The notes beneath the pieces are model-generated. The model was not told where the DNA came from. It saw only the letters and a list, made by a program, of their open reading frames with translations, and did no database searches. A program made the translations under genes and the position numbers. Source: Podarcis muralis (taxonomy: Eukaryota). Taken from it: 64,000 nt of DNA. Below are positions 2,516 to 5,019 of this stretch, one piece after another. The stretch covers positions 41,602,001 through 41,666,000 of the forward strand of contig NC_135659.1 of NCBI RefSeq assembly GCF_964188315.1, written 5' to 3'. How positions within the stretch are numbered: position 1 is the first letter of the stretch; each line of letters begins with the position of its first letter.

Positions 2516-2662
2516 TCATGACAACACTGTTAGTGTTACAGTCCCTTTCTGGCGCTTCAGAATTGCTACAGCTTGCTCATGAGTCACGCCTTCCAGAGTC
2601 TCTCCATTAACTGCTAAAATCTGATCGCCACGCTTTAGTCTGCTGTCATCTGCAGCTGCTCC
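2516..2662 (-). CDS. PATJ: PATJ last coding exon ([48 protein letters not shown]-stop); alternative frame reads EEQLQMTAD-stop
   Basis: Acceptor ctgtttttttttcag; TGA at 2516-2518; ORF 2516..2698; alternative-frame TAA at 2635-2637. Confidence 0.96.
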   Translation of the reverse strand, partial: [48 protein letters not shown]

Positions 2663-4895
2663 CTGAAAAAAAAACAGAAATGGCACATCAGAGGCCAAGC
2701 AATTTGAAGGGGCTTAATTAAAGAAGAATAAAAAGAGACATACACAAACCACCCTCATCGGTGACATTCCATTAACATTATTAATGCTTCTTGGAGCATT
2801 TGTGGCCATTAATGCTTCAAACACTTCACAGATGATGACGAAAAGGGGTGGAGAGAAGATTCTGGTCTAGACCAGACTGCCCCCACCGCCAAGATTAGGC
2901 GTGTCAATGGTACTCCCTGCCATTGTTGTTCTTTTTTTGATAAAACCAAACAGAACCAGATCAAATCAACTGAATACTGATTACTGACTGTAATAAAGAG
3001 ATTGAAGAGGAAATCAAGCGCACATGTAGGTGTGTGTGTCCCATATGCCATCAATGGTATAGAGGCACACATTCATTGCTCTAGACCTGGTTGGCTGCCA
3101 ACTGGGCCATGCAATGTTTGGAAATGAGATCTTTCCATAAGGCCTGATGCACTTCTGGGAGCCTCTCACTGTGTGGGCTAGTTCTTGCATATTGCATAAA
3201 TGAGTACCAAGTATCCATAAAGTTGCCCTTTTGAGATTTACACACACACACCGCATCTTGTGCTGCTGAATTAGCTTTCCAGAGATTGCTATTGGCCACA
3301 CAGTGGCTAGCCATCTGCTTTTAGGGAAAGTTGAGGAGAACTTCCTTTGCTGCACTATTACTCAGCAGGCTGCTATTAGCAGAAGCACCACTTTTCAAAA
3401 GATGTGTACTGATAGCCCACATAAGAACTCTGGAAGGAATAAGTCATGCATCATAGGATAAAGATTTGCACACATGGCTTCAAATCACAGGCACACAGCT
3501 TGTTGAAAATGTGAACTGATGATGTAAAATTGTCACACTTTTTTTTTAAAACTAACACAATGCTGGTCAAGTAGGTCAGTGCTGCCAGCTTTGCAAGATG
3601 AGATAACTGATGTATACTATTTGTGTCAGTTGCTGGGTGAATCGTTGAGTTGCTAGGTCACAACAGGTGGCCATGGCAGGACTCCTGTGTTTTTTTGTTT
3701 GTTTTTTAAATTAATGTCTAAACTAAGTACCTGAAGCTGTGCTAACCTGATTGCAAACAGTGTCCCATTTTCTAATACTCCCCTTTGTGGGCATTTTTAT
3801 ATGTTCTCAGCTCTCCAATATTCCAGTCCGTTTATAATTTCTGCACAAAGACATCTTTTTTTTTAAATGTCTGTTTCGCATTTCAGATTCTGCACATTTA
3901 AGCAAAGATTGAAACAAGATATGCACAACGGGCTGTGCATAAAATTTGATGCAACCTTGTTATATAATGCCCAAAACTGTTCAGTTGGGAGTAAGAAACA
4001 TGAAAATACGGAAAATAATGCAATGAACAAAGAATATGATACACCAGATCAACAAAGAGTAAAACACCCAGAAACAGGTACGTGAACACTTATTTGAATA
4101 TTTAAGTGGGAGAGGAACGAAGGATACACCTGATGCCAGAGGTATCATGGTGAACTAGGAGTGACGATAAATGCACGGCTGCAATTAAAATGTATGGCTT
4201 TGAAAAATCAAAATAGCAGCTGTGTAAACTTCTCTCCTGGTAACAGTAGCTCAGGAAGGGATTTGCACTAGTACCAGAGTTAAGCCTCCCTTTCCCATGT
4301 GCTGAGATCTCAATTCTGATCAGCTCCTCCCCACAGCTGCTATTTAAAAAAACTTGACATGCTATCACACATTAATTGTGAATTGGACCTCAGGCTGGTG
4401 CTTTTAAAGGGGCCTTCAGCATCTAACTTAGGAAAATGACTTTTCTTCATTCCAAAAATGAGAGCTTGAGAGCCCAACACCTTTCTGATGTGATAGAAGC
4501 TGAACTTTAAGGATGACTGTAAACACACCTTACATTTCAAGAACCTTTCCTGCTAAGAACTGTACGTTGTTAAGGGTGGGGAGTGGGCTGTAGCTCTGTG
4601 AGAGCTAAACTACGGTTCTCAGGACTCTTGGAGGAGGGTATGTGCTTTAAATGTATGGTGTGTACACAGCTGATGACATCCATTCACCTAGTCAATAGAC
4701 AACTTTTAAAAAATTTTAGCAACAGCCTGCTGGGGGTGTAGTTCCGATTTTCCAAGATATGGAAACTCACAGACTGCCCCCCACTTTCCCCAATCAAAGA
4801 GTGGCTTTGATCAAATTAAAATGAAATTAGTTGTTACAAATGTATTTTGAAGCAGCGAAGATACATGCATAGGTTCATCTTTTCTTGTCGATTAC

Positions 4896-5019
4896 CTTTG
4901 CAAAAATGGTCTTGACATAAATAGGGAGGTCTCCATGGGGACTTCCATAGCCCCCTACAATACTAAATCCCAATCCATCTGAGCCTTTCTCCAACACAAT
5001 AATCTTAGGCTGAGGTGAT
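4896..5019 (-). CDS. PATJ: PATJ penultimate exon, probably a cassette; first half of PDZ11 ([41 protein letters not shown])
   Basis: Acceptor gtgttttccag, donor AAG|gtaatc; 124 nt, phase 2 to 0. Confidence 0.94.

What the first reader, a model, noticed from the sequence alone, without database searches (positions are those of the whole stretch)
2635..5019. Dual-coding last exon: skipping the 124-nt exon yields EEQLQMTAD-stop, apparently conserved from mammals to lizard
Seen: the exon at 8197-8300 ends in phase 2 (GA). Joined directly to the last exon (GGAGCAGCTGCAGATGACAGCAGACTAA) it reads GAG GAG CAG CTG CAG ATG ACA GCA GAC TAA = E-E-Q-L-Q-M-T-A-D-stop, with the stop at 2635-2637. With the 124-nt exon included, the same bases encode [10 protein letters not shown] of an 11th PDZ. 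Recalled: the canonical 10-PDZ human PATJ ends ...HPEDTEEQLQMTAD, and mammals have DDGRLK in the PDZ frame. The lizard G-to-S change (AGC) therefore alters the PDZ frame but is a silent third position (Thr ACA) in the skip frame. Inference: both frames are under selection, and a 10-PDZ/11-PDZ splice switch predates the reptile-mammal split. The skip-frame stop is in the last exon, so it should escape NMD.
Basis: partly seen in the sequence, partly recalled or inferred. Interest (0 to 1): 0.78.

Follow-up and report, generated by a model that had tools for sequence, protein, structure and literature searches.

The report
PATJ ten-or-eleven PDZ splice switch
The lizard PATJ polarity gene can drop its 124-base second-to-last exon, which swaps a final eleventh PDZ domain for a nine-residue tail; the reading is correct, but both forms are already annotated for this species and across amniotes, and I found no sign that the short tail is itself under selection.

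Summary
The window holds the minus-strand 3' end of Podarcis muralis PATJ/INADL. Exon 8300-8197 ends in phase 2. Including exon 5019-4896 (124 nt) gives a terminal PDZ ending TLTVLS-stop at 2518-2516. Skipping it reads E-EQLQMTAD-stop at 2637-2635.

None of this is new. NCBI isoform X9 of P. muralis (XP_077784803.1) ends HPEDPEEQLQMTAD. Skip-type isoforms are annotated in squamates, turtles, crocodilians, birds, placentals and platypus, and spliced mammalian mRNA contigs carry the junction. The 11-PDZ form ends 118 of 120 sauropsid-centred and all 118 mammalian cluster representatives. This PDZ is the counterpart of MUPP1 PDZ13.

The claim of selection on both frames is not supported. The tail differs between lineages exactly where the PDZ frame changes silently (EEQLQMMAD, EEQQQMMGD, EEQLRTMAD, EEQLQMMAS, GERRQTAGD). 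The lacertid-pig identity looks convergent. Third positions in the overlap are not significantly more conserved than in the rest of the exon (p=0.45, low power).

The parts
8197..8300 (-). Exon A, the linker after PDZ10 ([34 protein letters not shown] + GA). It is 104 nt and ends in phase 2.
   Evidence: tblastn of the P. muralis PATJ model P0033 maps here.
8191..8196 (-). Donor GTAAGT of exon A. Read through, it gives GAG TAA, i.e. ...HPEDPE-stop (TAA 8195-8193), a third possible C-terminus.
   Evidence: The Ensembl/UniProt models P0033 and P0260 of P. muralis end ...HPEDPE. Pig P0532/P0535 and duck P0549 end the same way.
4896..5019 (-). 124-nt cassette exon encoding the first half of the terminal (11th) PDZ, including the GLGF loop. 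Skipping it shifts the frame.
   Evidence: Pfam PDZ profile positions 2-32.
2516..2662 (-). Coding part of the last exon in the PDZ frame: [10 protein letters not shown]...TLTVLS plus TGA. This is the second half of the 11th PDZ.
   Evidence: Pfam PDZ at 51.4 bits. It scores 70.9 bits against PDB 2fne, an MPDZ PDZ-domain chain that I recall as PDZ13.
2635..2662 (-). The 28-nt two-frame overlap. In the skip isoform it reads (GA)G-EQLQMTAD-TAA.
   Evidence: The same tail ends NCBI isoform X9 of P. muralis (P0274), P. lilfordi (P0281, P0283) and Zootoca isoform X9 (P0282).
1690..2515 (-). 3' UTR, reaching at least this far. AATAAA lies at 1689-1684; further signals lie near 610 and 585.
   Evidence: Fourteen small contig sets guessed to be RNA hold 0.57-0.94 of the sampled words of 1690-2662. 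The end of the UTR was not determined.
22187..24111 (-). Upstream exons of the PDZ8-PDZ9 tandem, used to identify the gene as PATJ rather than MPDZ.
   Evidence: segments, compared by eye with PDB 6ird INADL PDZ89. Exon map.

Best explanation
This is the ordinary 3' end of PATJ (INADL), and it makes two protein ends by a cassette-exon choice.

- When the 124-nt penultimate exon is included, it and the last exon together encode a terminal PDZ domain, the counterpart of MUPP1/MPDZ PDZ13. The protein then has 11 PDZ domains and ends ...TLTVLS.
- When the exon is skipped, the last exon is read one base out of register. A stop follows nine codons later, inside the last exon, so the mRNA should escape nonsense-mediated decay. 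The protein then has 10 PDZ domains and a short tail. This is the architecture of the canonical 1,801-residue human protein.
- The 11-PDZ form is ancestral in jawed vertebrates. The skip form is annotated throughout amniotes.
- The 28-nt overlap is a by-product. The tail looks conserved because it shares its bases with the highly constrained GAAADDGRLK motif of the PDZ, and it changes wherever that motif changes silently.

Shown here: the exon structure, both reading frames, both annotated isoforms in this species and many others, and the spliced skip mRNAs in mammals. Inferred: NMD escape, actual use of the skip junction in lizard tissues, and neutrality of the tail.
For: - Exon anatomy and both frames.
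- PDZ profile split over the two exons.
- Closest solved structure is an MPDZ PDZ domain, 2fne.
- Gene identity with P. muralis PATJ at 100%.
- 118 of 120 best PATJ cluster representatives (reptiles, birds, turtles, crocodilians, platypus, frog, rays) end in this PDZ. So do all 118 mammalian representatives.
- 25 skip-type isoforms from lacertids, Hemicordylus, Pogona, Anolis, turtles, crocodilians, galliforms, pinnipeds, armadillo and platypus, plus ducks and pig.
- Spliced Logan mRNA contigs: L001, L003 and L004 carry the skip junction; L002 and L005 carry the included exon.
- Human PATJ has 1,801 aa and 10 PDZ domains (PMC12512994) and ends at D1801 (PMC6300352).
- The tail varies at silent sites of the PDZ frame.
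- No significant excess conservation of third positions in the overlap: 6 changes over 9 sites against 34 over 39; 4/9 against 25/39 variable sites; Fisher p=0.45.
Against: - No RNA junction reads from Podarcis could be examined. Use of the skip junction in this animal rests on NCBI's model alone, and I could not see what supports that model.
- The first 21 bases of the last exon are identical in six distant amniote lineages. Podarcis against mammal L001 differs at only 1 of 9 third positions in the overlap, compared with 21 of 39 downstream. Weak extra constraint, from the tail or from splicing signals, is therefore not excluded.
- The four-taxon test has little power.
Confidence: 0.85

Rival explanations
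1. True dual coding. The nine-residue tail has a function of its own, so the 28-nt overlap is under purifying selection in both frames.
For: - The stop sits at the same place in every skip isoform seen.
- GGA GCA GCT GCA GAT GAT GGC is shared by Hemicordylus, Pogona, crocodilians, Dermochelys, pinnipeds and armadillo.
- Podarcis against L001 differs at 1 of 9 third positions in the overlap and 21 of 39 downstream.
- In the pig-like L005, the changes AGA to CGA and CTA to TTG are silent in both frames.
Against: - The tail differs in Anolis (EEQQQMMGD), birds (EEQLRTMAD), Gopherus (EEQLRMMAD), placentals (EEQLQMMAS, EEQLQRTAD, EEQMQRTAD) and platypus (GERRQTAGD), while the PDZ motif hardly changes.
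- Third positions of PDZ codons 2-8 all vary somewhere.
- The four-taxon test shows no significant difference.
- Podarcis against duck differs at 4 of 9 third positions in the overlap and 9 of 39 downstream.
- Four of the six leucine codons followed by a lysine (AAR) codon give a stop at that place anyway.
- In L004, where the PDZ half has decayed, the tail reads AVAPLRSTAA.
Confidence: 0.08
2. Any extra conservation at the start of the last exon comes from RNA-level signals, such as splicing enhancers that control the choice between the two acceptors, and not from the tail peptide.
For: - The conserved run lies in the first 21 nt after the acceptor.
- The cassette acceptor has a weaker pyrimidine tract than the last exon (0.72 against 0.89), as expected for a regulated exon.
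- Reduced silent-site change near the boundaries of alternative exons is established knowledge.
Against: No excess conservation was statistically shown in the first place. No enhancer was tested.
Confidence: 0.2
3. In lizards the skip isoform is not really made, or is only splicing noise, and the NCBI model was projected from mammalian proteins. Only the 11-PDZ form would then matter in sauropsids.
For: - No Podarcis junction reads were seen.
- No sauropsid skip fragment turned up among transcript-derived proteins.
- The Ensembl models for P. muralis show inclusion (P0152) or read-through (P0033, P0260) but not the skip.
Against: - Skip isoforms are annotated independently in many sauropsid genomes, each with its own lineage-specific tail sequence.
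- From my own knowledge, which was not checked here, NCBI's alternative variants are normally built from aligned transcripts or reads.
- The frame and stop are intact in all of them.
Confidence: 0.1

Closest known systems
Human/mammalian PATJ (INADL) canonical isoform: 1,801 aa, L27 plus 10 PDZ
   Same: It has the same architecture as the lizard skip isoform, with PDZ10, a linker and then a short tail. The last residue of human INADL is D1801 (PMC6300352). Pig ends HPEDTEEQLQMTAD, which matches the lizard tail exactly. Walrus has 1,801 aa and ends EEQLQMMAS.
   Different: Papers describe PATJ as a 10-PDZ protein (PMC12512994, PMC6300352). A published list of human PDZ domains gives INADL-1 to INADL-10 only (PMC7138185). 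The lizard gene, like nearly all vertebrate PATJ genes in the databases, also encodes an 11th PDZ.
MUPP1/MPDZ PDZ13 (PDB 2fne)
   Same: The last-exon half of the terminal PDZ scores 70.9 bits against 2fne. By my count from the printed alignment, 39 of 48 residues match. Both proteins end in VLS. The tandem PDZ8-9 of INADL corresponds to MUPP1 PDZ10-11 (PMC6300352), so by position this is the PDZ13 counterpart.
   Different: MPDZ is the paralogue. I did not examine whether MPDZ has a matching skip isoform.
NCBI predicted isoforms of P. muralis PATJ: X9 (XP_077784803.1, skip) and X4, X5, X8, X10 (11 PDZ)
   Same: They give exactly the two protein ends derived from the window.
   Different: Nothing differs. 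This is the same gene, already annotated.
CIPP-type short PATJ isoforms (C-terminal PDZ block only)
   Same: Short models of about 600-700 aa show the same two ends: alligator isoform B (607 aa, skip) and isoform A (685 aa, PDZ), and Pogona models of 624 to 705 aa.
   Different: Their alternative start lies upstream and was not studied here. The link to mouse CIPP is from memory only.

Membership tests
PDZ domain (Pfam PF00595) | Profile match above the curated cut-off | tested here: met
   The last exon alone scores 51.4 bits against a cut-off of 23.2. The cassette exon alone scores 12.9 bits. Together they cover profile positions 2-81.
PDZ domain (Pfam PF00595) | Carboxylate-binding GLGF loop and the conserved G-D-x-I-L-x-V-N segment | tested here: met
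   GLGF appears in the cassette exon translation. [10 protein letters not shown] appears in the last exon.
PATJ/INADL orthologue (not MPDZ) | Best matches are named inaD-like proteins, with exon-by-exon identity to the species' own PATJ | tested here: met
   P0033 (P. muralis PATJ, UniProt) is 100% identical over the queried region and maps to 12 exons of the window at 68-100% identity per hit. Zootoca is 98% identical. The MPDZ-like proteins with 13 matched PDZ stretches score lower on the linker exon.
PATJ/INADL orthologue (not MPDZ) | N-terminal L27 domain | not testable with these tools
   The L27 domain lies outside the 64-kb window. Precomputed PF09045 is listed for the full-length P. 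muralis relatives.
Dual-coding region (both overlapping frames under selection) | Both frames are translated in real isoforms | tested here: met
   Annotated isoforms with each end exist in the same species. Spliced mammalian mRNA contigs of both kinds were found.
Dual-coding region (both overlapping frames under selection) | Silent sites of the main frame evolve more slowly inside the overlap than outside it | tested here: inconclusive
   With four taxa there are 6 changes over 9 sites against 34 over 39, and 4/9 against 25/39 variable sites, p=0.45. Pairwise counts point both ways. Power is low.
Dual-coding region (both overlapping frames under selection) | The alternative-frame peptide is conserved beyond what the main frame imposes | tested here: not met
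   At least nine different tails appear among amniote lineages while GAAADDGRLK is nearly constant. The differences map to silent third positions of the PDZ frame.
NMD-immune alternative C-terminus | The stop codon of the shifted frame lies in the last exon | tested here: met
   TAA at 2637-2635 lies 26-28 nt into the last exon. Stability of the lizard mRNA itself was not tested.

The most novel reading that the evidence does not exclude
The nine-residue tail, and not only the PDZ motif, constrains the first 28 bases of the last exon. PATJ would then carry a small region truly selected in two frames since the amniote ancestor, and the tail would have a function of its own in the 10-PDZ isoform.
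Probability: 0.08. Interest if true: 0.45.

Novelty: already known. Interest (0 to 1): 0.15.

Why it matters
It matters little as a discovery. The splice switch and both protein ends are already in NCBI's annotation of this lizard and of most amniotes, and the skip form is the textbook human protein.

The useful by-product is a reminder that papers and at least one published PDZ-domain list (PMC7138185) describe PATJ with 10 PDZ domains. The gene of nearly every jawed vertebrate sampled, including primates, also encodes an 11th PDZ that corresponds to MUPP1 PDZ13. Interaction screens and variant interpretation that use only the 1,801-residue form miss that domain.

Two unnamed mammalian transcripts in which this PDZ half is broken suggest that some lineages have lost it.

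Tried and rejected
- **Junction reads.** Local scripts in the closed sandbox did use the whole window file afterwards: the frame scan and the tblastn exon mapping.
- **Paper searches.** Searches for the tail string and for 'PDZ11' or 'eleven PDZ' found nothing on a PATJ 11th PDZ. Adachi et al. 2009 (PMC2668367) is not held.
- **Failed look-ups.** Exact look-ups of alligator P0348 and of P0025 found no gene on record. Nucleotide data were therefore limited to the window and five Logan contigs.
- **Transcript fragments.** The fragment search with P0274:1687-1786 returned no sauropsid transcript fragments. The short hits P0390-P0394 are genomic exon read-throughs.
- **MPDZ rejected.** I considered that the gene might be MPDZ, because the terminal PDZ resembles 2fne. 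The linker exon and the PDZ8-9 exons match PATJ instead.
- **RBFOX site not followed up.** A UGCAUG lies 27 nt downstream of the cassette exon, but the motif is not enriched here: four in the 5.6 kb between exon A and the last exon, against about 2.4 at the window's own rate.
- **Possible human material.** I did not fetch the contig of P0379 because I could not rule out that it is human. Its tail equals that of pig P0538. For the human partial protein P0516 I read only the last 30 residues and used it no further.

Full report
**Observation.**

- Exon A spans 8300-8197 (104 nt) and ends ...CCT GAA GAC CCA GA, followed by the donor GTAAGT.
- The cassette exon spans 5019-4896. It is 124 nt long (3x41+1) and is flanked by AG and GT.
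- The last exon begins at 2662, after a T-rich tract and AG.

The translations give two ends:

- Inclusion reads ...HPEDPE / [41 protein letters not shown] / [48 protein letters not shown], with stop TGA at 2518-2516.
- Skipping reads ...HPEDP-E-EQLQMTAD, with stop TAA at 2637-2635.

Pfam places PDZ profile positions 2-32 on the cassette exon and 36-81 on the last exon. The two exons together therefore make one complete PDZ.

**What the gene is.**

- Open segments further upstream in the window resemble, by eye, the INADL PDZ8-9 tandem of PDB 6ird as printed.
- A library-wide HMMER search with the last-exon peptide returned multi-PDZ proteins whose best match sits at their extreme C-terminus.
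- One of these, P0033, is a UniProt model named 'PATJ crumbs cell polarity complex component' from Podarcis muralis. It maps exon by exon onto the window and is 100% identical over the region queried.

The window is therefore the 3' part of P. muralis PATJ, or of a very close relative. It holds fourteen exons between 61325 and 2516.

The nearest solved single domain to the last-exon peptide is the MPDZ PDZ-domain chain 2fne, which I recall as PDZ13. It scores 70.9 bits and also ends in VLS. INADL PDZ8-9 corresponds to MUPP1 PDZ10-11 (PMC6300352). By position, then, the terminal PDZ here is the counterpart of MUPP1 PDZ13.

**Both isoforms are already annotated.**

- Of the 120 best PATJ cluster representatives found with the PDZ10-linker region, 118 end in the terminal PDZ. 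These include reptiles, birds, turtles, crocodilians, platypus, armadillo, a seal, a frog and rays; in snakes the end is ...TVLP.
- A second search centred on mammals gave 118 new representatives from primates, carnivores, whales, bats, ungulates, rodents, marsupials and afrotherians.
- Listing the members of ten clusters showed the shorter forms. NCBI isoform X9 of P. muralis (XP_077784803.1, P0274, 1,786 aa) ends ...[17 protein letters not shown], which is exactly the skip product read from the window. P. lilfordi and Zootoca vivipara isoform X9 end the same way.

Skip-type ends in other lineages:

| Lineage | Tail |
|---|---|
| Hemicordylus, Pogona, crocodilians, Dermochelys | EEQLQMMAD |
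| Anolis | EEQQQMMGD |
| Gopherus | EEQLRMMAD |
| Galliforms and ducks | EEQLRTMAD |
| Pinnipeds (walrus model is 1,801 aa) and armadillo | EEQLQMMAS |
| Platypus | GERRQTAGD |
| Pig (P0538) | HPEDTEEQLQMTAD |

Papers give human PATJ as 1,801 aa with 10 PDZ domains (PMC12512994), and constructs run to D1801 (PMC6300352). Both facts agree with a ...TAD end, although I did not read the human canonical sequence itself.

Among 30 listed isoforms of rays, frogs, a teleost and a paddlefish, none is of the skip type. In this small sample the skip form is documented only in amniotes.

**RNA-level evidence.**

I then kept those letters out of every public search.

As a substitute I fetched spliced transcript contigs from Logan assemblies.

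- L001, L003 and L004 are unnamed mammals that join the linker exon directly to the last exon. Their tails are EEQLQRTAD, EEQMQRTAD and AVAPLRSTAA.
- L002 (duck-like) and L005 (pig-like) are full-length mRNAs that include the cassette exon.

The skip junction is therefore real in mammals. In Podarcis it rests on NCBI's model alone. Fourteen small contig sets, guessed to be RNA, hold most of 1690-2662, which suggests a 3' UTR of at least about 830 nt.

**Is the overlap selected in both frames?**

The geometry matters. PDZ codon position 1 is skip position 3. PDZ position 3 is skip position 2. Two things follow.

- Every silent third-position change in the PDZ frame changes a tail residue.
- Every first-position change in the PDZ frame, such as the lacertid GGC to AGC, falls on a tail wobble position. 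That this one change is silent in the tail is therefore no evidence of selection.

I rebuilt the first 21-24 bases from the two protein ends of twelve lineages. GGA GCA GCT GCA GAT GAT GGC is shared by Hemicordylus, Pogona, crocodilians, Dermochelys, pinnipeds and armadillo, so it is probably ancestral, giving ...QMMAD or ...QMMAS. Lacertids and pig each changed GAT to GAC, which makes the shared ...QMTAD convergent rather than inherited. Third positions of codons 2-8 all vary in some lineage. Each such change rewrote the tail in Anolis, birds, Gopherus and platypus, while the PDZ motif stayed the same.

With real nucleotides from four taxa (window, L002, L001, L005):

| Measure | Overlap (9 third positions) | Rest of exon (39 third positions) |
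|---|---|---|
| Parsimony changes | 6 | 34 |
| Variable sites | 4 | 25 |

The Fisher test on variable sites gives p=0.45.

Pairwise counts point both ways. Podarcis against duck differs at 4/9 in the overlap and 9/39 downstream. Podarcis against L001 differs at 1/9 and 21/39.

The conserved position of the stop is also weak evidence. It is made by the Leu-Lys codons of RLK, and four of the six leucine codons give TAA or TGA there.

In L004 the PDZ half has largely decayed, and its tail has drifted to AVAPLRSTAA. This is a single case from an unnamed, GC-rich genome.

Taken together there is no positive evidence for selection on the tail. Weak constraint, or constraint from splicing signals at the start of the exon, cannot be excluded with these data.

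**Mechanism.**

The best reading is a regulated cassette exon. The cassette acceptor has a weaker pyrimidine tract than the last exon (0.72 against 0.89), and both donors are good. Inclusion adds a PDZ. Skipping gives the 10-PDZ protein with a stop in the last exon, so the standard rule predicts no nonsense-mediated decay. That last step is inference.

A third end also exists. Reading through exon A's donor gives GAG TAA, and the Ensembl-derived models P0033 and P0260 end ...HPEDPE. Matching pig and duck models end the same way.

I did not fetch the contig of P0379, which I could not exclude as human. For the human partial protein P0516, which ends in the same PDZ, I read only its last 30 residues.

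**Verdict.**

The conserved 10-or-11-PDZ switch is real but already annotated, for this species included. The dual-selection inference is not supported. The one point worth passing on is that the literature's '10 PDZ domains' describes a single isoform of a gene that, in nearly all jawed vertebrates sampled, also encodes an 11th PDZ.

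Noticed in passing
L003:918-1085 and L004:398-520 (Logan mRNA contigs from SRR22969850 and SRR6003682): In two unnamed mammalian skip-type transcripts the PDZ frame of the last exon is broken. L003 has two in-frame TGA codons and two one-base deletions relative to its close relative L001. L004 has lost most of the similarity. 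The short tail frame stays open in both. Some mammal lineages seem to have lost the 11th PDZ.
   Followed up: partly
window 8191-8198, minus strand: Reading through the donor of the linker exon gives GAG TAA, i.e. ...HPEDPE-stop. The Ensembl-derived UniProt models of P. muralis (P0033, P0260), pig (P0532, P0535) and a duck (P0549) end in this way. This is either a third annotated C-terminus or an incomplete model.
   Followed up: partly
window 4864-4869, minus strand: A UGCAUG (RBFOX-type) motif lies 27 nt downstream of the cassette exon. The motif is not enriched in this stretch, and its conservation could not be checked.
   Followed up: partly
papers PMC7138185, PMC6300352, PMC12512994: A published list of human PDZ domains gives INADL-1 to INADL-10 only, and papers state that PATJ has 10 PDZ domains. 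Yet database isoforms of primates and all other mammals sampled end in an 11th PDZ.
   Followed up: partly
My frame scan saw repetitive GC-rich open segments at 18194-19943 on the minus strand.
   Followed up: no
P0307 (grey seal X2), P0286 (guineafowl X5), P0317 (alligator snapping turtle): Further annotated PATJ ends after the linker exon are neither the PDZ nor the skip tail: ...EDADHDPEFVTS..., ...EDPDSKQGSLLPL and ...EDPEFPKSTSP. They suggest additional alternative terminal exons in some species.
   Followed up: no
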